Assembly (NCBI RefSeq): GCF_001194135.2
Contig: NC_068982.1
Location: 34,004,290-34,055,230, forward strand
Source: Octopus bimaculoides
Taxonomy: Eukaryota
Direction of reading: 5' to 3'
DNA length: 50,941 nt
Position numbers and translations under genes: made by a program. Below are positions 18,107 through 50,941 of this stretch, in pieces. The notes under the pieces were generated by a model. It was given only the letters and a program-made list of their open reading frames with translations. It searched no databases and was not told the DNA's origin. Numbering within the stretch: position 1 is the first letter of the stretch; every line of letters begins with the position of its first letter.

Positions 18107-19323
18107 TAATAAATGACAAACATTGTTGCAGGAGTTTCCTTGTTCATCCTGTAATGACATCCTTTATGACTATGTTGGCTATTTGGAAATGGAGGAATTG
18201 AAAGAATCTGTAAGTATATACTCTCTCTTTTACATACAAACACACATATACACATCGATGTATACTGCTGCCTCACAATCATCTCAACTCAAAAGACAAT
18301 TGATATTATAGTTATTGATCCAAGACAATTTTCTTTCAAATATTATTCGTCATTTGACACATTCAAATTATTAAACATTTTCAATTCCTCTGATTTAAAC
18401 ATTTCTATGAGAATTTCAGAAATATTTCTTCTATACCTCTAGGTAAAAGGCACTCCACCAAAGCTTCCAGATCGGAGATATAAGCCAAAACCAGTAGAAA
18501 CCGGAGTAAGTACATTCATCTTAGTCAGAGTATAAAATTAAAAAATGTAAAGTGAATGAAAGACAAAGAAATAAAGATGAAGTTGGCCTTCCTTTCTGTC
18601 GTTTTTTCATATAGTTATGTTTTGTTTTGTTTTGTTCAGTGCTTTTTTTTTTGTATCAGGGAACATAACTCTTCGGTCCTTCTGAGCCATTGTTCTTGCA
18701 CTAAAAATATTAATTCTTTAGTGGGGAAAGAAAAGTTTCATTTACTTTTCCGAAAACTGTAGTGCTTATGATCCACTTCCTTTTCCAGCTATTTTTGTAA
18801 AACCTGTCTCATATCCAAGCAGGCACATTTGATAATGTACCTATCTACTAGACTTGAGAAACTCCTTATTATGTAATGTATTTGTATGATTGTTATAAAA
18901 TTAAATATTTATTCTTGAGCGAGATTGTTGCCAGTGTCCCTGGACTGGCTCTTGTGCAGGTGGCATATAAAATACACCATTTTGAGCGTGGTTGTTGCCA
19001 GTACCGCCTGACTGGCCTTCGTGGCGGTGGCACGTAAGAGCACCCACTACATTCTCTGAGTGGTTGGCATTAGGAAGGGCATCCAGCTGTAGAAACTCTG
19101 CCAAATCAGATTGGAGCCTGGTGTAGCCATCTGGTTTCACCAGTCCTCAGTCAAATCGTNNNNNNNNNNTCCAGCTGTAGAAACTCTGCCAAATCAGATT
19201 GGAGCCTGGTGTAGCCATCTGGTTTCACCAGTCCTCAGTCAAATCGTCCAACCCATGCTAGCATGGAAAGCGGACGTTAAACAATGATTTATTTAGAATA
19301 CTAAATTCTTCTTTGATTATGAA

Positions 19324-21551: not shown

Positions 21552-21722
21552 CGCACCCTCTACACTCTCGAAGTGGTTGGCGTTAGGAAGGGCATCCAGC
21601 TGTAGAAACTCTGCCAAATCAGATTGGAGCCTGGTGTAGCCATCTGGTTCACCAGTCCTCAATCAAATCGTCCAACCCATGCTAGCATGGAAAGCAGACG
21701 TTAAACAATGATGATGATGATG

Positions 21723-32120: not shown

Positions 32121-32149
32121 TTGAAATAGATATATTTAGGCAGAAATCA

Positions 32150-32340
32150 AAATCTTTTTACCAATTGATCTACTTACTACTACAAATCAAACAATGACGT
32201 AAAGAAATCGCACATCTTAAGAGGCTGCTTCTCGACAACTAAACAATTTAAACAAACGCGATGAGTTATTTACATAACGTTCAAATTATTTGGCGCGTTT
32301 TATCGTTAGAAGCGTTCAAAATGGCGTCCGATGACAACAT
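32150..32340. promoter_or_regulatory. CpG-enriched promoter region of the tektin, possibly bidirectional
   Basis: Local CpG enrichment; CRE-like TGACGTAA at about 32195; X-box half sites GACAAC at about 32233 and ATGACAAC at 32331; YY1-like AAAATGGCG at 32318. Short motifs, weak on their own. Confidence 0.35.
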
Positions 32341-32392
32341 TCGATTAAAATTCGTATTGAATTGTGGATATTTCAATGAGAAACAAAAGCTG
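32321..32392 (+). CDS. Candidate first coding exon of an unidentified gene, head-to-head with the tektin (MASDDNIRLKFVLNCGYFNEKQKL)
   Basis: CAAAATGGCG start context, 24 open codons, CTG|GTGAGG donor, CpG-enriched surroundings. No recognised homology. Confidence 0.4.
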
Positions 32393-33511
32393 GTGAGGTC
32401 CTCCACTTCTGCACAGAAATACCGATTTTGTTTCTAAAGAATTTGTTTTTCAAATTTTATCAAAATAATCGTAATCTGCACATTCAAATTCTGAGAATAT
32501 CTTGTTGTTCCCACATACAAATTGTTCTCCAAATATAAGCTCTCGGAATTTATATAATCAGTCTTTTCTTCCAAAGTTGATCAGCAATTTGAAACTTTAA
32601 GAAATCTATTTTAACATCAGTAATTTCCTGTAAATTTGGAATTATGAAATAATCGCGGAAAGTCAGTTAAATTTGATTGTTGTTACTAATGGCGGAAAAA
32701 ATTAAAATGTAAGCCAATCGCGTAGGATTTGAATGAAAAAATACGGAGAACTAGACACTACAAAGCATTTAACTTGTTTCAACACTGTATGATCCAAAAA
32801 AGATTAGTAGCAAGAAATCAAGTAAGTTATTCCTAGAGTTTATTACTTTGTCTATAGATTGACTCTTATGAATCGTGTCGAGAGTATGTAGCTCATTAAT
32901 CTACGCTTATTAATCTTCAACATTATTTGAGAAGAATTTCAGCCAACGGAAGATCGTTTATTTATTTAGTTATTTTGTAAATGTTGCGCTGCATCCGAGT
33001 TTCAATGTCAGTTGGTTCAGTTTCAAATATTTTCTGATAAAATAATGACGTCTTACAAAGGCACAAGGCCACAAATTTATGGGTGGAAGGAGTCGATTAT
33101 ATCGATTCCAATACTTGATTGGTACTTTATCGACTCTGGACGGCTGAAAGACCGAGTGGATATCAGCGAGATTTGAACTTTGAACTTCTCCGACACCCTA
33201 ATAATTCTGCCAATCCATCAGCCTTTATGATGTAAAATAATAGAGATTATTCAATTTATACGGTTCTTTGTGAGATAAAAACACGAGAATGTTTTATCTC
33301 TTTAATTTTTATGAAAAACGACGTAATTTTGTTTATGATGTAAAATAATGGAAGTAATTTCATTATTATTATTTTTTTTAGTATGATACAAGAATATTTT
33401 ATTTATTTCTTTTTATGACGTAATACACTGAATATATATATTTTTTCAATGGTCGGAAGTTAAACAAACAGAAAATGAGGCATTGCAGACATTAAAAAAT
33501 ATAATGAGCAT

Positions 33512-34290
33512 GCTCTTGATTGAGTTGCGGATCTGTCATGCCTTCTTTGGTCATGGAGATGAAGGGCTCTTCCATTGTGATGACTACTGCTTTGTCTCAG
33601 GGCCATACCCGTAGACCCAATTCTCATCACTGGTGAGGATCCTCAACATGAAGAATGGGTTATCAGCAGCATGCTGGCGGAGATCTTGACAGACTTCGAT
33701 ACGATGTTCTTTCTGCTTAGTGGTCAGAAGGCAGGCAACAAACTTGGCAGAAACATGCTGCATGTTTAACTCAGACATTAGGATTGCCTGCATCGATCCA
33801 TAAGACAGACCAACAACATCAGCAATCTCATTGATTGTCCTCCGACAATGCTCATGCATAAGCTGATGAATTTTCTCCAGATTTCCGGTGGGAGGTGACA
33901 CTCGTGACAGGTCTTCCAGATCACTCATCGTCTTCCAAGGATATTCTTCTGCTTTTGAAGCGCCTGTGCCACTTGAAATATTGTGTACAACCCATTGCCT
34001 TGTTACCATCAGCTTGCTGACATACTCAATGTCTCTGTAGCAGACTTCCCATGTTTAATGCAAAATTTCCCGTTGGCTCTTTATTCCTGTCCATGACAAA
34101 ATCACAGACTACAGCATACACATGATCACAAAAACACAAATTTCACAACTTGTGAAGTAAACAGAGTGATGTCACTTGGCATACTCCCTCATGGAGATCA
34201 CTGCTAGCTCTCACTGTGCACACAACCATGTGTTGCTATCTGTTGGCGTGCTACAGAACTAGTCCAGGAACTTTTTGATACTACCTCGAG
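33512..34290 (-). mobile_element. Mariner transposon, 3'-truncated and decayed
   Basis: ORF 33584-34009 has an HTH region, SAKFVACLLT (cf. AKFVPRLLT) and ILTSDENWVYGYGPETKQ (cf. ITGDETWVYGYDPETK). TIR-like TA-CTCGAGGTAGTATCAAAAAGTTCCTGGACT at the 34290 end. Confidence 0.88.
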
Positions 34291-34846
34291 TATATATAGG
34301 TGTATATTATCCAAAATGTATAGTATTAAATATCCATCACGGCTGATCTTACCAATCGGTTTCATATAAAGAATACAATGGAGTGTTGGCGCTCATCAGA
34401 GTTAGCAGATATAGAAGGGAATATGGCGACGGCTCTCTATTGTTGGAGATGGATTAGCACAGGCACTAAAAAAAAAAAGATAGAGAGGGGAAACCTCTAC
34501 ACACGGACCAGGAGTACAATCTAGGGAGAAAGTCATGTGCATCTATAAGTAAACAGTAAGGGTGGAGGCATAATTTTTTTGCAAGCTGGACACTGTTTAT
34601 AACGTACATTAAGATTCAGAAAATTTACTATAATTATTATTATCAATGCACCGTAAGCCACATAATATTACAGATTAATGTTTCAAGCTATATATTATCA
34701 TATAAACATCGTAGGAGTATATGAAAAAACCATACTGTCCTGTTCTAACAGGATAGTATGTTCTGTCCTGTTCTAATTAGTATTTATACTAATCTAATCC
34801 ATATGCACATATATATATATGTAGTGAAACTCGCACGGTCGTTCCT

Positions 34847-34882
<36 letters not shown>

Positions 34883-35621
34883 NNNNNNNNNNNNNNNNNN
34901 NNNNNNNNNNNNNNNNNNNNNNNNNNNNNNNNNNNNNNNNNNNNNNNNNNNNNNNNNNNNNNNNNNNNNNNNNNNNNNNNNNNNNNNNNNNNNNNNNNNN
35001 NNNNNNNNNNNNNNNNNNNGTGTTGTTCCTGTTTTTAAGGCAGGAACTCCTTGAAATTTTGGGTATTTGAGTATATTTAAAAATTTAAGCAATGGAGAAA
35101 ACGCATGTTATAATTGCATACTATATTCCTACATATGTTTCAAAGGATTACAACCTATGTGATCCATAGGGGTCTGTGATATTAAAATTGTAACCTTCTC
35201 ATCAGGGAAAGCATGGGAATCATCTTAAACGTAAGACATTATGACCGAGTATGAAAACAATAGATGGATAAGGTTATGACGTGATTCATTTAAAAAAAAA
35301 CCGTTAGAGAATTGGACGCTGCCGGATAGTAGGTTGGACAACACATACATATAAATGTGTGAAAACATACAGGCATACATAAATACATATACACAAATAC
35401 ACATACATACATACATACATATACACACATATATACACATATCGTGGATCTGGATTCAGCCCAGAATGTTTTTAATTTACTCATGGAGTTGGCCTGATTC
35501 CAAATGGTATATGTTGGGCTACAGCCTCTAGGAGTAAAGTTGAAAAAGTGTGACACACTGACATTCGCATTTATTATATTATATAGGTGAACTGCGATAT
35601 GGCGAGTGATTACTGTATGAT

Positions 35622-35653
<32 letters not shown>

Positions 35654-35679
35654 CGTACATACATATATCTATATCTATA

Positions 35680-35832
35680 TCATCATCATCATTATTTAAC
35701 GTCCGCTTTCCATGCTAGCATGGGTTGGACGATTTGACTGGGGACTAGCGAACCAGATAGCTACACCAGACTCCAATCTGATCTGGCAGAGTTTCTACAG
35801 CTGGATGCCCTTCCTAACGCCAACCATTCCGA
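35680..35832 (-). mobile_element. (GAT)n-tailed SINE copy running into an N gap
   Basis: Same family as 10040-10340. Confidence 0.75.
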
Positions 35833-36249
35833 NNNNNNNNNNNNNNNNNNNNNNNNNNNNNNNNNNNNNNNNNNNNNNNNNNNNNNNNNNNNNNNNNNNN
35901 NNNNNNNNNNNNNNNNNNNNNNNNNNNNNNNNNNNNNNNNNNNNNNNNNNNNNNNNNNNNNNNNNNNNNNNNNNNNNNNNNNNNNNNNNNNNNNNNNNNN
36001 NNNNNNNNNNNNNNNNNNNNNNNNNNNNNNNNNNNNNNNNNNNNNNNNNNNNNNNNNNNNNNNNNNNNNNNNNNNNNNNNNNNNNNNNNNNNNNNNNNNN
36101 NNNNNNNNNNNNNNNNNNNNNNNNNNNNNNNNNNNNNNNNNNNNNNNNNNNNNNNNNNNNNNNNNNNNNNNNNNNNNNNNNNNNNNNNNNNNNNNNNNNN
36201 NNNNNNNNNNNNNNNNNNNNNNNNNNNNATATATATATATATATATATA

Positions 36250-39200
36250 AGGGTTGAAATTTATTGCAACGGCTTGTTGTAAGATGTGAAAGATGAACAA
36301 TGCATGAAGTTTTAAGGAAATATTTATTTTTTACTGTTACATTGTACATACCTTGCCTCAACAGGCAGGTGATAAAATCATAGAGCATGCGAAGTAAAAA
36401 AGTTAATTTCGACCTGTGTGTTCTTATTGTAGTAGTAAACCATAGAGAGAGATATGGTAATGTGCAGAGAAGAGAAAGTGAGTTAGTGAAAGTGAGAGAG
36501 TGAGGGTCGAAACAACTGCTTTGTTGGCAAGATACCATAGTTGTTCTCTTTGCCCTCTTCTTTTTGCAATGTCATTTTGTTTAGCCTGTCTGCAGACTCC
36601 ATTCTCACTAACTGAGTTATCACCAAGTGACTAACTGATTAAGTTGTCACTGAGTAACTGAGTTGTCACCAAGTGACTAACAGATTTTTGCTTGGGGGGG
36701 TTCTTGTTTTTATAACTATCCAGAAGGATAGACATATCGTTGAGAACAACAGATTTAGTTGGTGGTACTTGTTATCTTAATACTAGCTTTTGGTGGTTTA
36801 AAAGAAGTTAGAAGGGTCAAGTGGTGAAGACATTATTTCGGTCTCGCTGAAGCAATCTGGCAAAAGTAAAACTGCTGTCACAGAAAAAAACCATTGTTCC
36901 ACTGTGAGAAAAGTTCTGTTGAACTGTTAATTTAAATTTGGCTATGGTGGATGGATCAAATCCACTTCATGCCTGCAAGATCCACTATATCACTCCCTCC
37001 CCAGTGAAGTTCTGGGAAAGGAAACGAATGATTGAAGGAGAGGAGGAAATGCATTGTTGAGGAGAAATTTCGCATTTGAGGAGAGAAGATCATTGAAGTG
37101 TATACGGAACAGTTTTTTATTCAGATTAGTTTGAATAGCGGTATCCCTTTGCATACCAAAATGTGTGCAGTCAGTGACTGTGCAGTACAGCAAATGAGCA
37201 CATGTGTGCAGGTGCACGTTTCGAAATTGACCATAAAATAAGCTCAGGTGAGTGAGTGAGTGTATTCTCAATCTGTGATATGAAAGATCTTCCTGCAGGG
37301 TTGCAGTGTGTGAAATGCTTGGAATGTTTTTACAAAGTGAAATGCATCTGGTGCTGTTGTCGTGGTTAATTGCTGAGGTTTAGCAAGGATGACAGTGTAA
37401 TCATGCAGGAGTGATGTGCAAGACAGATAATTTTCTCTGTTAATAACGTGATCTAACAGGGGGAAATTATGTCTAAACATGAGTGCAGAGCATGTGAACA
37501 TCCAATGTGAATCGAGTCGGAAAAATAATTGAGCTGGCACAAATGTGTTGCAAAACAAGGCAGTAGATCCATAATAGAGGTGCATGTGCATGTGTGCAAA
37601 AGGGCTTGCAAGGCTAAGGCAGAAATGCTTGTACATTGATTACAAATACAGTGTACAGTATTGAATATGCCAGTGATTAAAGCAGTGTTGAATATGCCAA
37701 CCAGTGCATAAGGTATAATATGCCTCGGTCATGCAGGAGCAAAAGTGTGAAATGCTGGCACATTGTAAGGGACAAACAACTTTCTCTATGTATATGTGAC
37801 TGCCCTAGGGTATTACAGAGACAAGTTGTGTCTACAAGGTACAGGGAGCATGAAAAACAAGTGAGAAAGGCATGGTGTGGTGCATGAATGTGACAGAGTT
37901 AGCATGCGTGTGTGTATGAACCATGTGTGCAGATGCATGTGCAAGGCTGAGGAAAGGTGCATGCAAAGAAAGAAATTGCAGACATTCAAAAGGAGAACAT
38001 TTAGCAAAAACCATGTAATAAAAACAGGTGAACAATGCATGTGCAATGCAAATATAAAAGGAAATAAGCAAAAATTGACAAACTTGGTTAGTAAGTGTTT
38101 TGGTCCTGAAAAGCTAAAAAGTAGCATTTGAAATGCAAAAATAGGTGCATGCAAAGTAAATTCAAATCTATGGCTGTCAAAAATGTTGCACATGTGTGCT
38201 CCCATATTTTCTTCCAGTTAGTTTCTGGGCATGTAGCTGTCAAAATGATGCATTTATTGGCTTCCATGGTCGGCAAATTCCTTGTGTGTTGGCTGTGTTG
38301 CATTGTTGTGGATTGCATCGCAGTATAGAGCTTTCTGTAGCAGGTCGAAGGAGGGTGCATCTTGGAGGTGACAAAGATTGTCATTCTTTTCCTTTGGTTT
38401 AGTGACTGTTGATATGAAGATTGTAGTTCTTTAGTTTGAAGTCAGCAAAATACAACAGCATGTAGCATCAGAAGGTAACAATTCTCTTTACCCGGGGTCA
38501 CCAATTTGTTGGCAATATAGCTTCAGAAAGCAGTAATTCCTTTGCTCAGGGTCGCCAGTTGTAAAGATAAAAATTACTTTTATAACAGTTGGGTCTCTAA
38601 TTTGTTGTAAGCGATGAAAGATGAACAATGCATGAAGTTTTAAGGAAATATTTATTTTTTACTGTTACATTGTACATACTTTGCCTCGACAGGCAGGTGA
38701 TAAAATCATAGAGCATGCAAAGTAAATAAGTTAATTTTGGCCTGTATGTTCTTATTGTAGTAGTAAACCATAGAGAGAGATATGGTAATGTGCAGAGAAG
38801 AGAAAGTGAGTTGGTGAAAGTAAGAGAGTGTGGGACGAAACAACTGCTTCGTTCGCGAGATACCATAGTTGTTCTCTTTGCCCTTTTCTTTTTACAATGG
38901 CATTTTGTTTAGCCTGTCAGCCAGACTCCGTATGCGAAGTAAAGTTAGATGTGGTAGATTTTCCTTGTATAGTTTTGTGTGCATGTTTTCTTTGCAGTGA
39001 TCCACAGATAGCGATGGAATGATGTTGTAAAAGAACAGAATTAGAGCTAGTGAAAGTTGTAGGGTCGTGGGAAGTTGTCTCATAATTACTGACAGTAAAT
39101 TTCATTTCTCCCTCTGACCATTATCTTTAGTAGCTGCCTTGTTTGTGATCATGATTCTAGCATTCTGCTCTCTAACTGATGGTAGCTGTCTCTGACTCAA

Positions 39201-39560
39201 GTTGTCATTCATTGATTGAGTTGTCACTAACTGGCTAACTGAACTGCCACCAAGTGATTAGCTGATTTTTGCTTGGGGGTTCTTGTTTTTATAACTATCC
39301 AGAAGAATAAACATATCGTTGAGAACAATAGATTTCGTTGGTGGTACTTGTTATCTTAATACTAGCTTTTGGTGGCTTATAAGAGGTTAGAAGGGTTAAA
39401 TGGTGAAGACATTATTTCGGTCTAGCTGGGGCAATCTGGCAAAAGTAAAACTGCTGTCACAGAAAAAAACCATTGTTTCACTGTGAGAAAAGTTCTGTTG
39501 AACTGTTAATTTAAATTTGGCTATGGTGAATCAAATCCACTTCATGCCTGCAAGATCCAT

Positions 39561-39564
<4 letters not shown>
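36250..39564 (-). mobile_element. Non-autonomous or internally deleted LTR retrotransposon with paired LTRs, PBS and PPT
   Basis: 5' LTR 39564-38560 (TGTA...TACA) is followed by AC-TGGCGACCC (PBS). PPT GGGGAGGGAG (37002-36993) abuts the 3' LTR (36992 to about 36250). The LTRs align at roughly 90% by eye, with a segment of about 240 bp present only in the 5' copy. No RT or integrase motifs recognised in the 1.55-kb interior. Confidence 0.8.
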
Positions 39565-39596
<32 letters not shown>

Positions 39597-39628
39597 CATA
39601 CATACATACATACATACATACATACATA

Positions 39629-40034
39629 CAGCAATACCTTGACTATCGCGGATATTATGTTCCAAAACCTCCCACAGTAGGTGAAAATTTGCAAAGTAAA
39701 AACAGTACTGTATTGTATATATATATTTTTTAATTATTTTTATAATTTGTATATATTTATTTTATTATAAATGTAAAAGAACACCGCACACTTGCCTCCC
39801 GAGTTTCATTTTCCATACAATATGTGCGCTTCTTTGTTTGCTCATCAATGGTAGACTACATATTTACTTTTAATATATTTTAGTTAATGTGTTATATGGT
39901 GCAGTACTGTACTATATTTTTATTTATTAATTTATTAATTTTTAGAAATGAAAATGCTGATTTTACCACAAAAATAATTAAAATTTAAAAAAATATAAAT
40001 TGGCTGCAGAAACCCACGATATACTGTGGAGTCT
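39629..40034. mobile_element. Tigger/pogo-type MITE
   Basis: Starts TA|CAGCAATACCTTGACTATCGCGG; the opposite end AAACCCACGATATACTGTGGAGTCT is a degenerate inverted counterpart cut by the N gap; AT-rich interior. Confidence 0.45.
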
Positions 40035-40185
40035 NNNNNNNNNNNNNNNNNNNNNNNNNNNNNNNNNNNNNNNNNNNNNNNNNNNNNNNNNNNNNNNNNN
40101 NNNNNNNNNNNNNNNNNNNNNNNNNNNNNNNNNNNNNNNNNNNNNNNNNNNNNNNNNNNNNNNNNNNNNNNNNNNNNNNNNNNNN

Positions 40186-40665
40186 GTCCACTCGTGACCG
40201 AGGAAGACCATTGCCGGCCTTCAGGAACATTCTGCGCTCTAGTACTAACTTACATTTTGCATTTATGGCTCCATTGGTGGCTAATGAACCCTGCTCTTGA
40301 TAAGCATATACGACTGCAAACATTGCAGATTAAGCTTTCCCCATTCACTATACGAGCCATACACTTTCGCGCAGCTCGCTTAAATTCTTCATGCTGGATA
40401 CGTGCTCTCTCCAAAGTGTTGATCCCCTCCTTAACCTGCTTCCTCCATCTGTGGCGATGACAGGCATTATTCTCCCAGTCAGTGTCCTGCATATCACAGG
40501 CCTTTAATGAGGACTTGACACAGTCCTTAAAGCGTAGCCTTGGTTTCTGTCGGAGTCTCCGAAGGATGGACCTAGTGCAGGCTCAACAGCTATCTAGCAA
40601 TAGCACGGGTATGCAGAAATTCCGGGATGGTGTGTCCGGCGTGCTGAAAGACCACTGGGAGTGAG
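40186..40665 (-). mobile_element. RTE-clade LINE 3' end
   Basis: Minus translation ...WENNACHRHRWRKQVKEG...CNVCSRICLSRAGFISHQWSH is the C-terminal C2H2-type motif of RTE ORFs, followed by ATGGTCTTCCTCGGTCACGAG. Confidence 0.8.
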
Positions 40666-41019
40666 GCGCCCCTCACCTTTATATACATACATACATACAT
40701 TCCCACCCCACTCATACACACACGCATATATATGAAGTGATTCATTGGTTTAAAACTGTCAGAAAGTGACTGGAAGGATCTCAGCAAAATTTACATTGAA
40801 GATAAAACATTTTCATCATGAAAACTTATTTCACAGAAAATCTCCAACAGAATTCTACATGGTGCCTCACAAGCAGATGCTTCTTTTCCTCTTTTCCAGT
40901 TCAGATCATCTTGTGCTCATAAGTCTTCTTTCTATGTTTTGAGTATGTGTTCCAATGATAAGGTTAACAAAATGCTGACTGTATATATATATATATATAC
41001 ATATATGTATATGTTTGTG

Positions 41020-41205
41020 TGTCTGTTTGTCCCCCCAACCATCACTTGACAACCCGATGCTGGTGTGTTTATGTCCCTGTAACTTAGCGGTTCAGCAAAA
41101 ATGACTGATAGAATAAGTACTAGGCTTACAAAGAATAAGTCCTGGGGTCGATTTGGTCGACTAAAGGCATAGCCACAGTCAAATGACTGAAACAAATAAA
41201 AGGAA
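41020..41205 (+). mobile_element. SINE 3' segment (related copies at 13320-13480, 16240-16460, and on minus at 47985-48150)
   Basis: Shared GTAACTTAGCGGTTCAGCAAAA...GAATAAGTAC...GGGGTCGATTTG...GACTAAA...ATGACTGAAACAA in four places. Confidence 0.7.
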
Positions 41206-44200
41206 AATATATGTGTGTGTGTGTGTGCGTATGACTGTCTTCTTACATCCACAGGCACAAGTGCCAGAAAGGTGACGCTGGGCTCAGGTGCCATCACGAT
41301 TTCGCTTTCGCTTGCCCCAACAGGTCTTCGCAAGCAGAGTTTAGTGTCCAATGAAGGAAAGGAAAGGAACGCATATATATATATATATATATATATAAAA
41401 TAGAATTATATGGTTTATCCCTGTTGTTTGCAATTTTTGGCATATTTTTGTGTTATTGTCTATTTTCTAATGATCTTTTTTTTTTTGTATGCTTTAAAAT
41501 AAGTGTTCTATGTGAATGACATTATCAACTATACAGGTTTCTTTTGAACAATCTGTCCAAAACACATTGCCCAAAGTGATCATGGTGGTTGGTGGTGGTG
41601 ATAATGAATGATGATTTTCATGTGAATGTTTGTGTTTACTATTGAAATACATCATTATATTCCAGTGTTACTTAACTCAACAAATCCGTAATGAAATAAA
41701 GCATTTTCAAATGTTGCTGAAATCAAAAAGATTTATACAGTTGATCTTTGTTCCAGATTTTATTTCATTTAATTTTTATATAAGAAAAAACAAACTTTGT
41801 TCTTTTTTTTATCCACAACCATTAGTAACAATTCATTAGAAAAAAGTAATATGTACAACATTATTTGGAAAATGTTTTAATTTACAGCAACAAAAAAAAC
41901 CATATAATGCAAAATAGTGCTGTTATTTCTTCTTTTTAATTTAAAGATGAATGACATTTAATTAACTTGTATTTTCTAATTACAATATATTTATTAATAT
42001 TGCATTAAACTAAATTGTAAATGAGTTTAAAGAATTTTGAAACTAATAATTGCTAACCAATTCATCTGTGAAAAATGAAAAATAATTTGATCAGTAAATG
42101 TCTGTGGAATTTCCTCCTTAGCAAGTACACAAATTAAGCATTTACTTAGCATTTTCCCCTGTTTAAGGATATTATTGGCACTACTACTTATCTTCAATTT
42201 TATTTCCTTTATTGTCTTGTTAATAATCCTTGAAGTCTAAGAGTTTTAAACAGTGTAAATGACTGTTATGATGTTTATGCCTTGTCCAAGGAAATTAGCC
42301 ACGCAAATGAAGGAAAAATATACATAAGTAGTACTGAAACCAGATTGAAAATACAACTTGCCAGGAGCTTATCACTACTCTATGGTGCTTATTCTTTTAT
42401 TAATGCTATAACATAAAAAGAAACTATTCAGGCTATAAAGCATAGTTTTCCACATAGATTGTCTAATATTCTTTTTTAACAAAATAAGAATGAACAAAGT
42501 TATTTACAAGTATAATTTTTTTATAGAGCAAAAACGTTGAGTATATCAGAAAATTATGAATTTTAGATATGGAAGGCATATTATTTTTATTATTGACTTT
42601 CATCATAATCTTATTACATGTAAAAAATATTATATGTAACATTCTTTTCGCGGTAATAGAAGTATTAGGAGAATTTCAACAGTGATTAATTTTACAAGAA
42701 AATACTATTATAATTAACAAACAATTGAAGGCATCAAGTTGGCAGAATTTTTGGAGTATACTTTGCAGTATTTCTTCCAGCACTTTGTCTTCTGAGTTCA
42801 AATCCTTCTGAGGCCAACTTTCCAAATTTGCTTTTCATCCCTTTTGAGTCAATAACCAAAAGTACCATTCAAGTACCAGGATCAATATAATCAACTAAAC
42901 CTTTCCCCTCAAAATGCCTAAATCAAAAATAATTATTATTAAGTCTAGCATAAGTACAGAGTAGCAGAAATAGTAACTGACTTACAGTGCTGTATGATCA
43001 CTAAAAGCAATGTGAAAATTGAAGGACATAGTGGAATTGATGGGATACAAGCAAGAAAACCTCGAACTGATCCATATCTTGGTAATGAAATTGGTGAGCA
43101 AGAAATTTAATCAGTTTAACACTACAACCAGGTCTTTTGAGAGCCCTTTATCAGGGTTCACTCTGTGACTCTTCAGTCTGTAAATCACAAACGAAGGTTT
43201 CTTTCACCCCACCTCTATCAATCTCAAAAGCTCTATAAAAAGGTTATGCGGCTTTCCTAACTCCTTTGACAAAGTCATATAAAATATTTGATAAGCAAAT
43301 GCAGCAAATCAACTCAGAAGGAATATAAAAAAATGTCATGGTTGATAATATTGAATGGACAGTCAGTGAAAATGATTTGGAAAATATAGTTTAGAAAGAG
43401 CATAAAACCTCTAGAACAATTGAATCTGCAGACGTGGAAACCGTTTTAGTATTTCAAAATCCAGTGCAATCATGTAATAGAGCATTTGAACTCATACAAT
43501 AGAACATTTGAAGAAACAGAACCACAAGCATTTTTTTCTGATGTTCTGCTGGCTTGCCACCTTAAAAAAAATAATAGTTTCAAATTTTGGGCACAAGGCT
43601 CGCCAGCAATTTTAGCAGAAGAGGGTAAGTCAATTACATAAATCCCAATGCTTATCTAGACCTTATTTTATCAACTTTGAAAGGATAAAAGGCAAATTTG
43701 ACCTTAGCAGAATTTAAACTCAGACATAAAGAGCTGGAAGAAATATGGCTCAGCATTCTATCCAACATGCTAATAATTCTGCCATCTCACTGTCTAATAA
43801 TAATTGTCTCTATTCACTTTGTGATTCTTGTACATCACTGTAATTCACTCTTTGTCTAACAAAAGACATGGATCAAAACTATAAAGATGAAATTAAATAC
43901 AGGAGACTATACAGTCTCAGCCATACCCACTATCTGAAGTTATAATAATAATTGCTGACATAAGCACAGTGCCTGAATTTTGAGAGGAAGGGAGCAGTCA
44001 ATTATACCACATGCAATACTTCAATGTTACTTTGTTTCAATCCCAGAGGGATCTGCCTTCATAATAATAGTAATAATAGTTACAAAGCCTGAAATATTGG
44101 GGGAGCAATCCCAGTGCTCAAGTGGTGCTTATTTTATTTTATTGTAACTGAAAGGATGAAAGGCAAAGTATAACTCAATGATATTTGAACTTAGAACATA

Positions 44201-45144
44201 AAGCTAGAAGAAATATCAAGCATTTTGTCTGACACAAATGATTCTGGCAGCTCACCTCTCAAATACAAATAATTCAAAATTTAGGCACAAGGTATAAATT
44301 TTGGGGAGGGAGCAAGCCAATGACATCATCCTCAGTACTTGATTGGTACTTATTTTATCCACCCCACAGGATGAAAGGCAAAGTTAATCTTAGCAAAACT
44401 TGAACTTAAAAGCCAGAAGAAATGCCGCTAAGCATTTTGTCTGACATGCTAACAATTTTTCCAACTACTACTACTACTAATAATAATAATAATCCTTTCT
44501 ACAATAGGTACAAGGCCTGAAATTTTGGGGGAGGGCGTTAGTCGATTACATCGACCCCACTGTTTGACTGGTACTCATTTTATCGACATCAAAAGAATGA
44601 AAGGTAAAGTTGACCTCGGCAGAATTTGAACTCAGATGAAATGCCACTAAGCATTTTGCTCAGCATGCTAACAATTCTGCCAGCTCACTGCCTTAAATAA
44701 TAATAATAATTGACATGAGAACAGAGCATCCCACCACCACCGCCATCAAAAGAAAAATGCTCTATTGGGGACAGCTAGGATTTTGAGATTGATACTTAGG
44801 TTTTGAGTATCTTCCATAAACCTTATAATTTGTAAAAAGAGACCCTATGAGACCTTTGACAACAGGATGTTGTCCACTCTCACAAAATTAACCAGAGCAA
44901 GTAACATCTGAGATGTGGAATATAATAATAAAACTTACATGGATTTTTAGATTGCTGTTTGCAGATTTTTCTATTTATGAAAATATTTTGACTGGTTACT
45001 TTCAATTGTTCAGCATTTGTATGACAGACAGAGATGTATACAACTGGCTGTTGTCTTTAAGCCTGTTCATCTCAACTAAATAATGCTGCTATTAGTGGTT
45101 ATATTAGATTATGTTAATGTATGATGAGACAGAAATCCAATAAC

Positions 45145-45686
45145 TTACAACTGCCGCATGAGCGACGTGGCCGGTACCGTGTCCGACCCGCAAGTTTGCG
45201 GGTCGGACCCGGGGGAATAGTCACGCTCTAGGTGACCCTCACACCCCAAGGGGGTCCAGACTACTATGTAGAGTAGTCGTTGATCGGATGGGTTCTCCGA
45301 CTTGAAGGAATGGTTTCGCCTCTCCTTTATTCCGAAGGTCAGACCCGCGTAACCCACTGCGCGATCAACTCTACACAGCCGGCGCGTCCCTGATTCTTCC
45401 GCCAACCACCCATCCACCCACCTTGTAGTGAGCGCCCTCGCCCGTGCTGTCGCCGTCGTTCCACGCCCTGGCAGATCCGCTCGCTCGCCCGCCCACTGGT
45501 AGCCGCCTATCCGTTCATGCTGTCGTCATCGGCCTATCGGTTTCCTCCTCCTTGCCCACGCAGTCGCTACGACTCGAAGGGATGTCCTCGCCTCTCCTTT
45601 CTGCCGACGGTCGGACAAGCGTAATCCACCGCGCGCCCACCTTGGAGTGAGCGCCCTTGCCCTTACTGTCACCGCCGTTCCATACA
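45145..45686 (-). other. Unclassified GC/CpG-rich 540-bp insert with four tandem hairpins and an internal direct repeat (probable mobile-element terminus)
   Basis: Sharp composition edges against AT-rich flanks; hairpins at 45181-45278; repeat blocks 45299-45463 and 45570-45683; AATAAA on the minus strand at about 45326-45331. Confidence 0.6.
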
Positions 45687-46595
45687 CAGACAATATTCTT
45701 GTGGTCAGGATGGACTGATACTTATTACCTGGCTAAGTGTTATTAGGTAGGAAACCTAGATTAAGGACATAAGAAAATACTCTTGGTCAAAAGTCAAATG
45801 TCAAACACACATTGGAGAGGCTTAATAATCTGATTCATGACAAATTTTTGAGTTTATTTTTATTTGTTGTTTGTATTTTTTAAATTTTAATTTTGGGGGA
45901 AAAAATGGTGTTAGCAAATGAATTATAGAACAGAACTCAAAACACATTTAACCCAGAATCCCTTGCTGTCTCTCACACACAAACACATACACAACACATT
46001 CTCCCAATCAGTGCCCTTTAAGAGAGTATTAGTAAGAATAAAAAGCTGTGATCCAGACACAATATGGAATATTTGTGTGTATGTACAAAATGAATATAAA
46101 AAAAAAACAATTGTAATGCATCTTTTGTCAAAATGCATTGGAATAAATGGAAGCTATGCAAATAAGAATCTAAAAGCCTCTTAACAAAAGTATGGTATGG
46201 TTAGAAATTAAATATGATTCAATATAAATGAAGTTTTCTTTTTGACACATAACATGTCTTGTTTTCTTTTTCCCAGAGTAAGTGGATAGTACAGACTTGA
46301 GTGAGATGATCTGGTGCAGCTGTTTGGACGCAGATAATTTGGCACGACTAACTGGACATGCAGTGGATTTTGGCACTAGAAGAAAACACACACACATGCA
46401 GAAATATACACATACAAATAGAAAGAGTGGGAAAAAGAGACAATACAATATATTTATTGAACACAATTGACATAAATACTTTCTCCCTCTTTATACACGT
46501 AAAAAGAAATATGCTCCACACATAAACAGAGAGAGAGAGAGAGAAGGAGGAGAGACAAACAGACAGAGAGGTGGGGAGAACAAGAAAAACATTAA

Positions 46596-47156: not shown

Positions 47157-47334
47157 TTAAGTTGAAATTGTTCCATAAACCGGTGTATAGTCGCTCCTGC
47201 GTTTTTTCCAGCACAAGAAGGCTCCACCAAGTATTATTAGCAGCACAGGAAGACCAAGACCAACAGCAATAATGATGATTGCTGCTACAGAAATTTTTTC
47301 TACTGGTGCCTCTCCAAAACCAGTTATGAAAAAC
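47157..47334 (-). CDS. GLMP: Terminal exon of a GLMP/NCU-G1-like lysosomal membrane glycoprotein (TM helix and cytosolic tail)
   Basis: TTTCAG acceptor. FFITGFGEAPVEKISVAAIIIIAVGLGLPVLLIILGGAFLCWKKRRSDYTPVYGTIST-stop parallels the GLMP C-terminus (G.G.PP.D.LS...IMAV.LG.P....GG...KK..Y). Upstream exons were not found in the window. Confidence 0.72.
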
Positions 47335-48147
47335 CTGAAAAATAAGCATAAAAAAAAAACTATCAATTTAATTTCAAATCTAGAGAGCTTCAAAACTAAA
47401 ATTTAGAAAAAAGAAAACAATTTTAAAAAAATCACTGGATTTTCAATTAGATCCCATAAAGAATGTTATATTATATACAAGGAAAATCTTTGTGTTGTTT
47501 ATTTATATCATTTTACATTCAACATTGAAATCTAGCCAGTGTCCATTTTGTTTTTAATTCTTGTGAGAATCAATAAAAGACTCAAGTACTGGGGTTGATG
47601 TAATTAATAATATAGCCTTGTGTGCCTGTTGGAAATCAATATTAAGTACCTCATACTGTTTAATAAGTGTCACTGTTTGTTCAGAGAAAGCAAAATCAAA
47701 GATTCTATAACATTCTACACATTATAGCAATCCCTACCTTATTAACATCACTTTCAATTTCAAATACATAGTACTGTTATAATTGTACAAGATTTTCATT
47801 CCACCTTCAAAGTTAAACAAATATCTTTACATTTTCTTTCCATTCATCATTACCATCATCATCTAATGTTCACTTTTCCATTCTTGTATGGGTCAGACAG
47901 AATTTGTTGAGGCAGATTTTTTTATAACTGGATGCCTTTTATGTTGCCAACCCAATCCTGTTTCCAAGTAATCTTTTATCTTTTACTTGTTTCAGTCATT
48001 TCAGAAATTGACCCCTGGACTTACGCCCTGTAAGCCTGGTGCTTATTCTATCAGCCTCTTCTGCCAAACAGCTAAGTTACAGGGACGCAAACACACCAAC
48101 ATCAGTTGTCAAGCAGTGGTGGTGGGGGGACAAACACAGACACATAA

Positions 48148-48184
<37 letters not shown>

Positions 48185-50941
48185 TCTTCTTTCAGTTTCT
48201 GTCTACCAAATTTACTCACGAGGCTTTGGATGGCCCAAGGCTATAGTAGAAGACACTCTTTAAAGTATAAAGTTGAATTTTGTGTAGCCACCTGCATTTT
48301 GCAGGGAGTATTACCCATTTTTCTGGGCTCTTTTCACAGCTATACCCCATTCGAAATTTGCATTAGATTTTGTATGAAAAGAAAAAAAAAACATGGAAGG
48401 GAGTGGGGCTTGCTTGTGGTTTGTAGAGAAAACGTTAAACGTATCTGAAAAAAAACATGAAGAACTGTGAAAGAAGGCGAATAAGTACCGGGGGTGGGGG
48501 AAAGAAAAGAGAACTAACACTTGATCATTCTAGAACTCCCAGAATAAAAACATAAACACCTGAAAAACTTTCCCTCTATTCATTACTAAATGTCTTCTTC
48601 ATTGTTAGAAGTAAAGAAGCTAGAAAAGATCGATCGTATTTCAGTCTAATTGTCATTGTAAATGACTGAGGCTTTCTTTTCTCTGTCTCTTTACGGTTAA
48701 GAGAGTGAAGGTGCATGGCTCAGCAGTTAGGGGTATTCATCTCATGATCATAAAGTCGTGAATTCCTTGCAATGCACTGTGTTCTTGAGCAAGGTACTCC
48801 ACTTCAATTTACTGCTGTCCACTCAGCTGGCAAAATTGAGTTGTAGCTGTAATTCAAAGGAGCTAGCCCTGTCATATTCTGTGTGAAGCTGAATCTCCCT
48901 GAGAACTACATTATGGTATGGATTTTTGTGGAATACTCAGCCACTTGCATGTTGATTTTACGAGCAGACTGTTCCATTGATCAGATAAACAGGAACCTCG
49001 TCGTCGTAACCAACGGAATGCCATTTTTTAAAAAGAGTAAAAGAAAAGGAAATGTTCCATATTGTAAAGCAAAAATGTTATGTGTTTGGTATAAGCAGTG
49101 AAAGCTAAGATGAAATAATTTCTATTCTGTTGCCCTCGACTCATGCTCAGTTTGATAACAACAGCCTGCACATCGGTGTTTATCTGGAGGCTTGGCCACC
49201 AGATCTGTGAGATCCAAAAATGCTGCTGTTAGGACCAGATTAACACCCACAGTGACCCTAACGACTAAAATAGATTTTCCTGCCCCTGTATTGGATCCTT
49301 TTTCATTTTCTTTCAACCACTTGAAGGTTTATCTTGCTCCAGTCTACTCAGCTGGTCAAAATGAGTTGTAGCTGTAATTAAAAGGGGCCAGCCTTATATT
49401 TTGTATGAGGCTGAATCTCCCTGAGTATTATGTTAATGGTATGCATGTCTGTGGATTACTCAGCCACTTATGAGTTAATTTTATCCTCGTGTGGTAATGA
49501 AAAGTGAAAGTGACATCCAATATTTGCTGTAGTTATTTATCTTTGATTTAACAATGTGTCTATGTATCTATGTATCAACTTTTTTTTTATCTATGTATCT
49601 ACTGTCTCTCTAACTTTCCCACTTCCTCTGTGTCCCTCCGCTCTCCAGCTTTTAATTTAACAATGTTTGTATGTATCTATGTATCAACTTTTCTTTCGAT
49701 CTATGTATTTACTTTTCTTGCGATGTGATAAACAGTTAAAAGCACAAAACAAACGTCGTCACCACTCACTGTCTCTTTCACTTCCTCTCTGTCCTCCTCT
49801 CTTCTGCTTTGCCACTCATTTCTTCCTTTGAAGTAAATTGTGACACACACTACAGGTACACATGCACAAAAACAACAAGTTGGTGCATTAATATTATTGA
49901 TTGTTATGTCTTCCAACTTTTTACACTGAGTTCAAATCCTACCAAAGTCAACTTTGCTTTTTATCCTTTCAGGTTCAATAAAATAATGTACCAACCAAGT
50001 ATTGAGACCAATGGTATCGATTAACCCTTCTCCTCAAAATTTCTAGCCGTGTGCCTAAACTAGTAAAATTTATATCATTAGTTTCAGTCATTGCACTGCA
50101 TACTAGGCATGGGTATCATCTTTAATGGTCTGTTTGATGATATTAACCCCAGTATTCATTTTCAAATCTATCTTATTTTATCGAATTCTATTTGTGAAAC
50201 TGCTAATTCACAGAACTCAAGTAAACATGAACTTGAAAACAGAACCAAATACAGGTAGGTAGTGTGTGTGTGTAATTTAATGTCTATTTTCCATGCTGGC
50301 ATGGGTTTGATGGTTTGACAGGCTGGCCAGGCAGAAGACTGCACCAGACTTCACTGTCTGTTTTGCAGGGTTTTTACAGCTGGATGCCCTTCCTAACACC
50401 AACCATCTTACAGAGTAGGCTGAGTGCTTTTTACATGGGAGCAGCAAGGTCTGCTTTGGCATGGTTTTTACAGCTGGATGCTCTTCCAAGCTAAATATAC
50501 ATGTATATGTGTATATATAAAAATATTCACACACACACACATATATATGGATATATATATACGGATATGTAATATATATATGTGTGTTGAAACCATAGCC
50601 CAAACCTGACTGAAATTTGTCTCTAACCCCCTTTAAAAATTACGATTTTTAACTCTCATTTCTGTTACTGATTTAAACATTTAATCTCACGTTTAAACAC
50701 TGCTGTGTTTCTTTCAACTTTTTTCTAAAAACCTAACGAATTTGACCAGCATGATGTACTGCTGCCGGTTCTCCCTCTCCCTCTCTCTCTCTCCCTCCCT
50801 ATTGTATTCTATCTCTCTCTCTCTCTGAATCACCACTTCTTCCACCATTTCCTCTTCGACTCGCGCGCGAACCCAAACACATAACCAGCTCGCTTTCCAA
50901 CTCCACCACAATTTCGTATTGGAATCTCTATACTAATAGAA

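What the first reader, a model, noticed from the sequence alone, without database searches (positions are those of the whole stretch)
45145..45686. GC-rich 540-bp island with four back-to-back hairpins, an internal repeat and TACA at both junctions
This is the most structurally ordered non-coding stretch in the window. Hairpins: a perfect 13-bp stem GTCCGACCCGCAA/TTGCGGGTCGGAC (45181-45208), GTCAC/GTGAC (45220-45236), ACCCC/GGGGT (45243-45255) and GACTACT/AGTAGTC (45259-45278). Blocks 45299-45463 recur, diverged and partly deleted, at 45570-45683. On the minus strand an AATAAA lies just before the hairpin cluster, like an LTR R/U5 layout, but the canonical TG...CA ends are not both present. 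TACA flanks both edges, which fits either a 4-bp target duplication or a recombinase crossover core as in DIRS/Ngaro-type elements. It may be a solo terminus of an undescribed element or a structured RNA module. It lies about 1.5 kb downstream of the GLMP-like stop on the same strand, so it could supply that gene's poly-A site.
Basis: partly seen in the sequence, partly recalled or inferred. Interest (0 to 1): 0.72.

Follow-up and report, generated by a model that had tools for sequence, protein, structure and literature searches.

The report
Orphan GC-rich insertion beside GLMP gene
A sharp-edged, 533-base, GC- and CpG-rich non-coding block with a hairpin cluster and an internal duplication lies 1.5 kb downstream of an octopus lysosomal-membrane-protein gene. 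It is most likely a fragment of a mobile element or another captured repeat, and nothing found here shows a function.

Summary
The window is Octopus bimaculoides chromosome CM046602.1. Positions 45150-45682 have 62% GC and CpG o/e 1.11, against flanks of 33-35% GC and CpG o/e 0.14-0.20, and the change happens within about 10 nt. One end carries five hairpins, including a perfect 13-bp stem seen in 0 of 2000 shuffles. Two blocks (A, B) recur at 80% and 87% identity.

The island has no ORF, no Pfam or Rfam match, no tRNA and no terminal inverted repeats. It has no relative in about 134 kb of octopod DNA (window plus four loci) or in any phage, plasmid, E. coli, viral, metagenome, prokaryote or protein collection searched.

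The island starts 1.47 kb downstream of its stop. Five poly(A) hexamers precede the island's own, so it is not needed as a poly(A) site. The syntenic Argonauta interval has no such sequence, so I read it as a lineage-specific insertion.

My best guess, at low confidence, is a 5'-truncated non-coding 3' end of a non-LTR retrotransposon on the minus strand. Rivals are a solo LTR, captured rDNA-spacer or satellite DNA, and a tyrosine-recombinase-element remnant. No octopus whole-genome assembly could be searched by DNA and no repeat library (Dfam, Repbase) was available, so the family is unresolved.

The parts
45150..45682 (-). The whole GC/CpG-rich non-coding island (533 nt). The minus strand is taken as sense because it is 59% purine (A>T, G>C) and carries the AATAAA.
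   Evidence: No ORF longer than 90 aa.
45181..45208 (.). Hairpin 1: perfect 13-bp stem with a 2-nt turn (12 bp plus a 4-nt loop in the RNA fold). It extends to 17-nt arms at 45177-45212.
   Evidence: (I1). 0 of 2000 shuffles reach 13 bp.
45220..45300 (.). Four further short hairpins: 45220-45236 (5 bp), 45243-45255 (5 bp), 45259-45278 (7 bp) and 45284-45300 (5 bp).
   Evidence: Each is at chance level on its own; they stand out only as a cluster.
45295..45370 (.). Repeat block A, copy 1. It contains the minus-strand AATAAA at 45326-45331.
   Evidence: (D1).
45567..45642 (.). Repeat block A, copy 2 (78% identical over 76 nt). The position matching the hexamer is not AATAAA here.
45364..45416 (.). 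53-nt stretch present between A1 and B1 and absent between A2 and B2.
45417..45463 (.). Repeat block B, copy 1.
   Evidence: (D2).
45636..45682 (.). Repeat block B, copy 2 (87% identical). Its end coincides with the right edge of the island.
45464..45566 (.). 103-nt spacer between B1 and A2. It is about the same length as the hairpin segment (109 nt) but only weakly alignable to it (z 2.5).
45159..45185 (.). Candidate third, strongly diverged B-like copy (70% over 27 nt, in register with A1).
   Evidence: (D3). Weak: z 1.6-2.6.
45146..45149 (.). Left TACA. On the minus strand 45145-45149 reads TGTAA, directly after the island.
45683..45686 (.). Right TACA.
47157..47402 (-). Neighbour, not part of the island: the open frame that holds the last exon of the GLMP-like gene (transmembrane helix plus short tail). 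The stop codon is at 47157-47159, 1471 nt upstream of the island on the minus strand.

Best explanation
The island is compositionally foreign, non-coding DNA that entered the GLMP-tektin intergenic region in the octopus lineage. It is not part of either gene. The most likely source is a retroelement. My first choice is the 5'-truncated 3' untranslated end of a non-LTR retrotransposon lying on the minus strand.

In that reading the hairpin cluster in the last roughly 150 nt, headed by the 13-bp stem, is the 3' tail structure that the element's own reverse transcriptase recognises. This is how 'stringent-type' LINEs work. The A/B duplication would be an old internal duplication of the UTR that was already diverged when this copy was made. 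The copy itself would be inert.

Shown: foreign composition, sharp edges, no coding capacity, a local structure cluster at one end, the internal duplication, absence from the syntenic Argonauta interval, and position relative to GLMP.

Inferred: the retroelement origin, the strand, the role of the hairpins and the young age.
For: - The edges are sharp to within about 10 nt. GC is 0.62 and CpG o/e 1.11 inside flanks with CpG o/e 0.14-0.20, so the DNA either arrived recently or is shielded from methylation.
- No frame is coding. The longest ORF is 90 aa. Pfam on all six frames found nothing. A six-frame search of 5.8 billion protein clusters found nothing at E<=1. phmmer of the 90-aa ORF against 1.84 billion representatives found nothing.
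- The structure is concentrated at one end only, as in LINE 3' tails, whose stem-loops are bound by their own ORF2 protein (PMC4176376).
- The minus strand is purine-rich (59%, A>T, G>C) and carries the only AATAAA.
- The minus strand reads TGTAA directly after the island. That is the unit that ends the eel L2 element UnaL2 (PMC3747384). This is a lead only, because it is a single 5-mer.
- There are no terminal inverted repeats. Read from the sequence, there are no Helitron ends and no canonical LTR ends with a matching target duplication.
- Another GC-richer stretch (about 50% GC) with an unclassified Cys/His-motif ORF lies in the same window at 40250-40650.
- The syntenic Argonauta interval between conserved anchors holds no related sequence.
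Against: - No second copy was found in the window or in 104 kb of O. bimaculoides, O. sinensis, O. vulgaris and Argonauta loci, 83 kb of it not overlapping the window. Family membership is therefore unproven.
- There is no reverse-transcriptase remnant, no microsatellite or poly(A) tail, and no convincing target-site duplication. The options are 4-bp TACA, or an 8/9-nt imperfect match 13 nt outside the left edge.
- 62% GC is extreme for a transposable element in a 36% GC genome.
- The AATAAA lies 176 nt from the putative 3' end, too far to be a LINE's own signal.
- An approximate 220-270-nt periodicity fits tandem-repeat DNA just as well.
Confidence: 0.3

Rival explanations
1. The island is a captured fragment of GC-rich tandemly repeated non-coding DNA, such as rDNA intergenic or external spacer sub-repeats, or a satellite or extrachromosomal-circle fragment. 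It would have been pasted into a double-strand break by end joining.
For: - The layout reads as about 2.2 diverged units of 220-270 nt: B0-hairpins-A1-extra, then B1-spacer-A2, then B2. Spacing is in register (136 vs 138 nt).
- It is non-coding, CpG-rich and hairpin-rich, and its fast-evolving sequence has no database relatives. These are properties I know from rDNA spacers.
- It has no transposable-element hallmarks at all.
- Only 5 of 20 differences between the copies are CpG transitions, so the source was not heavily methylated.
Against: - No rRNA segment or any Rfam family is attached.
- The third unit is statistically weak (z 1.6-2.6).
- The hairpin segment and the spacer are barely alignable.
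- The source could not be examined, because octopus rDNA is not in any collection available here.
Confidence: 0.25
2. The island is a solo LTR of an LTR retrotransposon in minus orientation. U3 would hold the duplicated A/B blocks, R would hold the AATAAA, and U5 would be the hairpin-rich part.
For: - 533 nt is a typical LTR size.
- The AATAAA lies about two thirds of the way along the minus strand, with 176 nt of structured sequence after it.
- Duplicated blocks upstream resemble enhancer repeats.
- A 4-bp TACA flanks both edges, and TG and CA occur 2-3 nt inside the left edge and at the right edge.
Against: - With TG...CA ends (45152-45682) the flanking 5-mers are ACAAC and TACAC, which do not match. 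With a perfect TACA duplication the ends are AC...CA.
- No short terminal inverted repeat goes beyond TG/CA.
- No second LTR or gag/pol remnant is present in the window.
Confidence: 0.13
3. The island is an internally deleted remnant of a tyrosine-recombinase retroelement (Ngaro/PAT type) with split direct repeats A1-B1-A2-B2.
For: - The blocks occur in the order A1, B1, A2, B2.
- A2 and B2 are contiguous at one end of the island, and A1 and B1 are separated by other sequence. This is the order defined for split direct repeats (PMC4157794).
- Such elements make no target duplication.
Against: - The definition asks that A2 be an identical repeat of A1 and B2 of B1 (PMC4157794). Here identity is 80% and 87%.
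- B1 and A2 are 103 nt apart.
- 145 nt, including the hairpin cluster, lie outside A1.
- No RT, methyltransferase or recombinase ORF is in or next to the island.
Confidence: 0.05
4. The island is a resident functional element: a lineage-specific structured non-coding RNA gene, or an unmethylated regulatory or promoter island serving GLMP's 3' end or the downstream tektin gene. Selection or protein binding would keep it GC- and CpG-rich.
For: - CpG o/e is 1.11 inside DNA at 0.14-0.20. If the block is old, that retention needs protection.
- The hairpin cluster folds better than shuffles (z -3.5 and -4.3).
- The sequence is unique in all DNA examined.
- It lies on the same strand as both neighbouring genes.
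Against: - There is no Rfam family even at E<=10, except one chance-level lncRNA hit.
- There is no counterpart in the Argonauta interval, although the neighbouring non-coding anchors are still alignable at 64-76%.
- The two internal copies give no covariation.
- A GC rise of about 30 points with razor-sharp edges is not what lack of CpG decay alone produces.
- No pol III boxes occur above chance and no T-run terminator is present.
Confidence: 0.1
5. The island is foreign DNA from a microbe, parasite or virus, either transferred horizontally or carried in by an assembly or gap-closing error.
For: - Its GC and CpG content are alien to the host genome.
- It is a single copy in all DNA examined.
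- The assembly is a scaffolded short-read draft with seven N gaps in this window.
Against: - The island is continuous with unique octopus sequence on both sides. The nearest N gap is 5 kb away.
- Nothing turned up in BLAST searches of phages, plasmids and E. coli genomes, or in exact-pattern scans of IMG/VR, JGI metagenomes and 185,579 prokaryote genomes.
- 533 nt with no coding signal in any frame is unlike prokaryotic or viral DNA.
Confidence: 0.07

Closest known systems
3' tails of stringent-type (L2-clade) LINEs such as eel UnaL2 and zebrafish ZfL2-1/ZfL2-2
   Same: Both are non-coding 3' regions with a stem-loop close to the 3' end that the element's own ORF2 protein recognises (PMC4176376). 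UnaL2 ends in TGTAA units (PMC3747384), and the island's minus strand is followed directly by one TGTAA. 5'-truncated copies consist of 3' UTR only.
   Different: The island has one TGTAA, not a repeat array. Its stem (13 bp) and the five-hairpin cluster have no sequence similarity to any known tail that could be tested here. No RT ORF, no partner SINE and no other copy were found. Its GC content is 62%.
Solo LTRs of LTR retrotransposons
   Same: Similar size, a poly(A) hexamer in the distal half, duplicated upstream blocks, and a 4-bp repeat at both edges.
   Different: Canonical TG...CA ends and the flanking duplication cannot both be satisfied. There is no terminal inverted repeat and no partner LTR or internal region.
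Split direct repeats of Ngaro/PAT tyrosine-recombinase retroelements
   Same: The A1, B1, A2, B2 order, with A2-B2 at the terminus (definition in PMC4157794).
   Different: The repeats are 80-87% identical rather than identical. B1 and A2 are not adjacent. There is extra sequence outside A1, and no RT or recombinase genes.
rDNA intergenic-spacer sub-repeats or GC-rich satellite units
   Same: Non-coding, GC- and CpG-rich, hairpin-rich, tandem units of a few hundred bases, and fast-evolving so that databases hold no match (from general knowledge of rDNA spacers).
   Different: The island sits alone in unique DNA with only about 2.2 diverged units. No rRNA sequence is attached, and its source was not available for comparison.

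Membership tests
Non-LTR retrotransposon (stringent-type LINE) 3' fragment | A stable stem-loop near the 3' end of the sense strand | tested here: met
   The 13-bp stem at 45181-45208 lies 31 nt from the 45150 end. 0 of 2000 shuffles reach it. Fold z is -4.3 on the minus strand.
Non-LTR retrotransposon (stringent-type LINE) 3' fragment | A 3' terminal short tandem repeat or poly(A) | tested here: not met
   Only a single TGTAA abuts the island. There is no array and no A-run, and TRF reports nothing here.
Non-LTR retrotransposon (stringent-type LINE) 3' fragment | Other copies share the 3' end, have variable 5' ends, and the long copies carry an RT ORF | not testable with these tools
   No octopus whole-genome assembly could be searched by DNA and no repeat library (Dfam, Repbase) was available. 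No copy was found in the window or in 104 kb of fetched octopod loci, 83 kb of it not overlapping the window.
Non-LTR retrotransposon (stringent-type LINE) 3' fragment | A target-site duplication flanking the copy | tested here: inconclusive
   There is a 4-bp TACA at the edges and an 8/9-nt imperfect match (45129-45136 vs 45686-45694). Both are within chance expectation (my estimate).
Solo LTR | 5'-TG...CA-3' ends with a matching 4-6-bp target duplication | tested here: not met
   The TG at 45152 and the CA at 45682 give flanks ACAAC and TACAC. The perfect TACA duplication gives ends AC...CA.
Solo LTR | Related full elements with paired LTRs, primer-binding site, polypurine tract and gag/pol | not testable with these tools
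   There is no second copy in the window. The genome could not be searched.
DIRS/Ngaro/PAT tyrosine-recombinase retroelements | Split direct repeats A1-B1-A2-B2 in which A2 is identical to A1 and B2 to B1 (PMC4157794) | tested here: not met
   The order is present, but identity is 80% (A) and 87% (B). B1 and A2 are 103 nt apart, and 145 nt lie outside A1.
DIRS/Ngaro/PAT tyrosine-recombinase retroelements | RT and tyrosine-recombinase ORFs | tested here: not met
   The island has no ORF longer than 90 aa and no Pfam hit in six frames. No RT or recombinase-like ORF was recognised among the >=90-aa ORFs of the window (most were not scanned against Pfam).
tRNA-derived SINE | A tRNA-like head with pol III A and B boxes | tested here: not met
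   ARAGORN finds no tRNA. Box-like matches at 2 mismatches occur at chance frequency across the window.
TIR DNA transposon / MITE | Terminal inverted repeats | tested here: not met
   No inverted pair joins the two ends.
Helitron | 5'-TC and 3'-CTRR ends inserted between A and T, with a hairpin just before the 3' end | tested here: not met
   Neither strand shows these ends at 45150 or 45682.
Any curated RNA family (Rfam 15) | A covariance-model score at or above the gathering threshold | tested here: not met
   There are 0 hits at the gathering threshold in the whole window. At E<=10 the only hit is HOTTIP_1, at 17 bits against a cut-off of 50.
rDNA spacer or satellite fragment | Sequence identity to the species' rDNA unit or to a tandem array elsewhere | not testable with these tools
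   The source sequence is not in any collection offered. Internal periodicity is only partly supported.

The most novel reading that the evidence does not exclude
The island is the first seen copy of an undescribed GC-rich, non-autonomous cephalopod element whose A-B-A-B repeat and terminal hairpin cluster are its working parts. Alternatively, it is an insertion that the host now keeps unmethylated as a regulatory or RNA module between GLMP and the intronless tektin gene.
Probability: 0.1. Interest if true: 0.55.

Novelty: new member of a known kind. Interest (0 to 1): 0.3.

Why it matters
If it is a transposable-element fragment, it is routine annotation. Its undecayed CpGs would still mark a family that was active recently in Octopus bimaculoides, and it would be a sense-strand insertion just past the 3' end of a housekeeping lysosomal gene.

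If it instead proves single-copy, conserved among Octopus species and unmethylated, it would be an unusual CpG island of foreign composition in an invertebrate with mosaic methylation, and worth an expression and methylation check.

On present evidence the ordinary reading is much the more likely.

Tried and rejected
- **RNA families:** Rfam at the gathering threshold on the whole window and at E<=10 on the island found nothing usable.
- **tRNA and pol III signals:** the tRNA/tmRNA scan found none. Pol III A/B-box scans were at chance level.
- **Coding tests:** all negative. These were the ORF list, Pfam on the 90-aa ORF and on six frames, the 90-aa ORF and a six-frame query against 5.8 billion protein clusters, and phmmer against 1.84 billion representatives.
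- **BLAST against annotated collections:** phages gave only chance-level hits (E 0.6), plasmids none, and E. coli genomes none.
- **Exact or degenerate pattern scans:** I used the 13-bp hairpin, the positions shared by the A copies, the positions shared by the B copies, and the hairpin 3-4 region. IMG/VR (4 scans), JGI metagenomes (2) and GTDB genomes (2) all gave 0.
- **Exact-protein look-ups:** the island ORF and two neighbouring ORFs were looked up to find independent contigs. None is on record.
- **Empty-site test:** the tektin orthologue fetched O. sinensis and O. vulgaris loci, but their 10-kb flanks stop at about window position 39.7 kb, 5.4 kb short of the island. Only Argonauta was available.
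- **Paralogous empty site:** the joined flanks have no other copy.
- **Plus-strand GLMP search:** I first looked for the GLMP-like gene on the plus strand at 40-43.8 kb and found nothing. The gene is on the minus strand.
- **Readings rejected from the sequence:**
  - Telomerase RNA: there is only a 6-7-nt piece of a telomere-template permutation.
  - Hammerhead or other ribozyme: no core motifs, and Rfam is negative.
  - ITS2: no 5.8S or 28S flanks.
  - TRIM-like miniature LTR element: the repeats are too diverged and the left end does not coincide with a repeat.

Full report
**Where the window comes from.** The intronless tektin ORF at 30468-32120 (minus strand; Pfam Tektin, E 2e-129) is an exact product on Octopus bimaculoides GCA_001194135.2, chromosome CM046602.1. 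The window is a scaffolded draft with seven N gaps. The nearest gap to the finding is at 40035-40185.

- Positions 45150-45682 (533 nt) have GC 0.621 and 55 CpGs (o/e 1.11).
- The 1.1-1.3 kb on either side have GC 0.33-0.35 and CpG o/e 0.14-0.20. The window average is GC 0.358 and CpG o/e 0.47.
- In 20-nt windows GC jumps from 0.3-0.4 to 0.65-0.75 at 45150 and drops again at 45682.
- A scan of four other octopod loci (104 kb; 83 kb of it not overlapping the window) found no 300-nt stretch with GC >=0.55 and CpG o/e >=0.8.

**Hairpins.**
- The first is a perfect 13-bp stem, reached in 0 of 2000 dinucleotide-preserving shuffles. The others (5-7 bp) are individually at chance level.
- Five distinct hairpins fall in 120 nt, against one in the remaining roughly 390 nt.
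- As RNA, 45145-45300 folds with z -3.5 on the plus strand and -4.3 on the minus strand. The island as a whole gives only -1.3 and -1.6. It is not a rod or a globally ordered RNA.

**Internal repeat.**
- The repeat is solid. Block A matches at 80% over 69 nt (E 4.6e-12) and block B at 87% over 47 nt (E 5.6e-11). A 53-nt stretch is present only in the first copy.
- A third, much weaker B-like copy at 45159-45185 stands at the same distance from A1 (136 nt) as B1 does from A2 (138 nt). This hints at about 2.2 diverged units of 220-270 nt.
- The statistics for that third copy are weak (z 1.6-2.6).

**What it is not.**
- It is not coding. The longest ORF is 90 aa. Pfam finds nothing in that ORF or in any of the six frames. 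Neither the ORF nor a six-frame query finds anything among 5.8 billion protein clusters. phmmer against 1.84 billion representatives returns nothing.
- It is not a described RNA family and not a tRNA.
- Pol III box-like matches occur at chance frequency.
- It has no terminal inverted repeats and no Helitron ends.
- It has no relative elsewhere in the window, in the fetched octopod loci, or in phages, plasmids and E. coli genomes.
- Eight exact or degenerate pattern scans of IMG/VR, JGI metagenomes and GTDB genomes gave nothing.
- The unique flanks have no paralogous copy that could serve as an empty site.

**Surroundings.**
In Argonauta hians the tektin orthologue is preceded, 4 kb upstream on the same strand, by a gene with Pfam PF15065 (GLMP).
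- Its last exon aligns with window 47160-47327 at 82% amino-acid identity. The window frame 47160-47402 itself matches PF15065 at E 1.4e-12, covering profile positions 308-352 of 353.
- The stop codon is at 47157-47159, so the island begins 1471 nt downstream on the minus strand. It lies 13 kb upstream of the tektin start.
- On that strand ATTAAA or AATAAA occur at +74, +699, +1266, +1293 and +1299 from the stop, before the island's own AATAAA at +1826. The plus strand of the island has no such hexamer.
- The island could be read through or used, but the gene does not need it.

**Synteny.**
- The GLMP-tektin spacer is 4.0 kb in Argonauta and 15.0 kb in O. bimaculoides.
- Collinear anchors are window 47418-46896 with L005 5774-6315 (E 3e-63), window 45998-45869 with L005 6821-6956 (weak, E 9e-5), and window 42603-42486 with L005 7619-7740 (E 1e-17).
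- The island lies between the last two anchors. The matching Argonauta interval (about 0.7-1.3 kb) contains nothing similar and nothing comparably GC-rich.
- Neighbouring non-coding anchors are still recognisable at this evolutionary distance. This argues against an old conserved RNA gene and for a gain in the octopus lineage.
- The sharper test would use O. sinensis and O. vulgaris, and it failed for a technical reason. Their loci, fetched through the tektin orthologue, stop 5.4 kb short of the site.

**Age and methylation.**
- Flanks at CpG o/e 0.14-0.20 indicate long-standing germline methylation, as expected for the body and 3' flank of a housekeeping gene (inference).
- An island with 55 CpGs at o/e 1.1 is therefore either recent or protected.
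- Of the 20 differences between the two A/B copies, only 5 are CpG transitions. The copies diverged in a largely unmethylated setting.
- I think the duplication predates the insertion, so that this copy arrived with already diverged repeats. That is an inference.

**Mechanism.**
- I consider it established that this is an inserted, non-coding, compositionally foreign block.
- For its source I rank a retroelement terminus first, and within that the 5'-truncated 3' UTR of a non-LTR element on the minus strand (confidence about 0.3).
- Reasons for that choice:
  - The structure is confined to one end.
  - The strongest stem lies 31 nt from that end.
  - The minus strand is purine-rich (59%) with A>T and G>C.
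  - A TGTAA directly follows the island on the minus strand. That is the unit with which the L2-clade element UnaL2 ends (PMC3747384).
  - Stringent-type LINEs depend on just such 3' stem-loops, which their own ORF2 protein binds (PMC4176376).
  - From general knowledge, 5'-truncated UTR-only copies are the commonest kind of LINE copy.
- Points against:
  - There is no tail array and no convincing target duplication.
  - There is no RT remnant and no second copy.
  - The GC content is extreme.
- The main rival (about 0.25) is a captured piece of GC-rich tandem non-coding DNA, such as rDNA spacer sub-repeats. That would explain the periodicity, the CpG richness, the hairpins and the lack of database relatives equally well.
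- A solo LTR (about 0.13) fails the combined end and duplication test.
- A Ngaro/PAT remnant (about 0.05) matches only the A-B-A-B order and fails repeat identity, contiguity and ORF content (definition in PMC4157794).
- A resident RNA or regulatory element (about 0.1) and foreign DNA or an artefact (about 0.07) remain possible.

**Limits.**
- None of the collections offered holds octopus genomes searchable by DNA, and none holds Dfam or Repbase.
- Copy number, family and the sister-species empty site are the three facts that would settle the matter, and none could be obtained.

**Verdict.** The feature is real and ordered as described. Its interpretation as an LTR or DIRS terminus, or as a structured RNA, is not established. 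The ordinary explanation, a fragment of a repeat, remains the most likely.

Noticed in passing
window 30468-32120 (-): An intronless 550-aa tektin-3-like gene. It is 96% identical in O. vulgaris and O. sinensis, and it is also a single exon in Argonauta (475 aa, 85%). A separate multi-exon tektin-3 (53% identity) lies on another chromosome in Octopus. This looks like an old, conserved intronless paralogue, possibly a retrogene.
   Followed up: partly
window 47157-47402 (-), and beyond the right end of the window: Only the last exon of the GLMP-like gene (transmembrane helix plus cytoplasmic tail) lies in the window. About 260 nt of its 3' UTR is alignable with Argonauta at 67%. No gene was listed in the 10 kb of the intergenic spacer nearest tektin (window 32121-42120) in the O. 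bimaculoides record.
   Followed up: partly
window 10035-10196, 10941-11084, 12804-12946, 19050-19284, 21563-21708, 50246-50397; also L005 3317-4653: An interspersed repeat recurs at six or more places in the window and also in Argonauta. One frame of it reads ...[11 protein letters not shown].... It appears as an inverted pair at about 10.1 and 10.9 kb, so it is an old family shared by octopods.
   Followed up: no
window 11843-11938 (-), next to the N gap 11092-11842: A PiggyBac-type transposase fragment (Pfam DDE_Tnp_1_7, E 1.1e-4, just under the cut-off), interrupted by an assembly gap.
   Followed up: partly
window 36240-36990 and 38603-39576: Both stretches align to the same segment of the O. 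sinensis and O. vulgaris loci (86-87%). They bracket a strongly G-skewed region at 37.0-39.5 kb and sit next to N gaps. This is either a local duplication or assembly redundancy.
   Followed up: no
window 40250-40650 (-): An 80-aa ORF ends in a Cys/His zinc-finger-like motif within a stretch of about 50% GC, directly before an N gap. It could be the C-terminal end of a retrotransposon ORF, but it has no Pfam match. It shares a 9-nt string (TGTAAGTTA) with the island's minus-strand end, which is within chance for a window of this size.
   Followed up: partly
window 27201-27550: A second, milder CpG-rich patch (GC 0.51-0.52, CpG o/e 0.8-1.1) lies inside a 45-48% GC region at 25.5-28 kb. The ORFs tested there have no Pfam match.
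   Followed up: no
window 13860-13999: A perfect tandem duplication of a 69-nt unit (2.0 copies, 100% identical).
   Followed up: no
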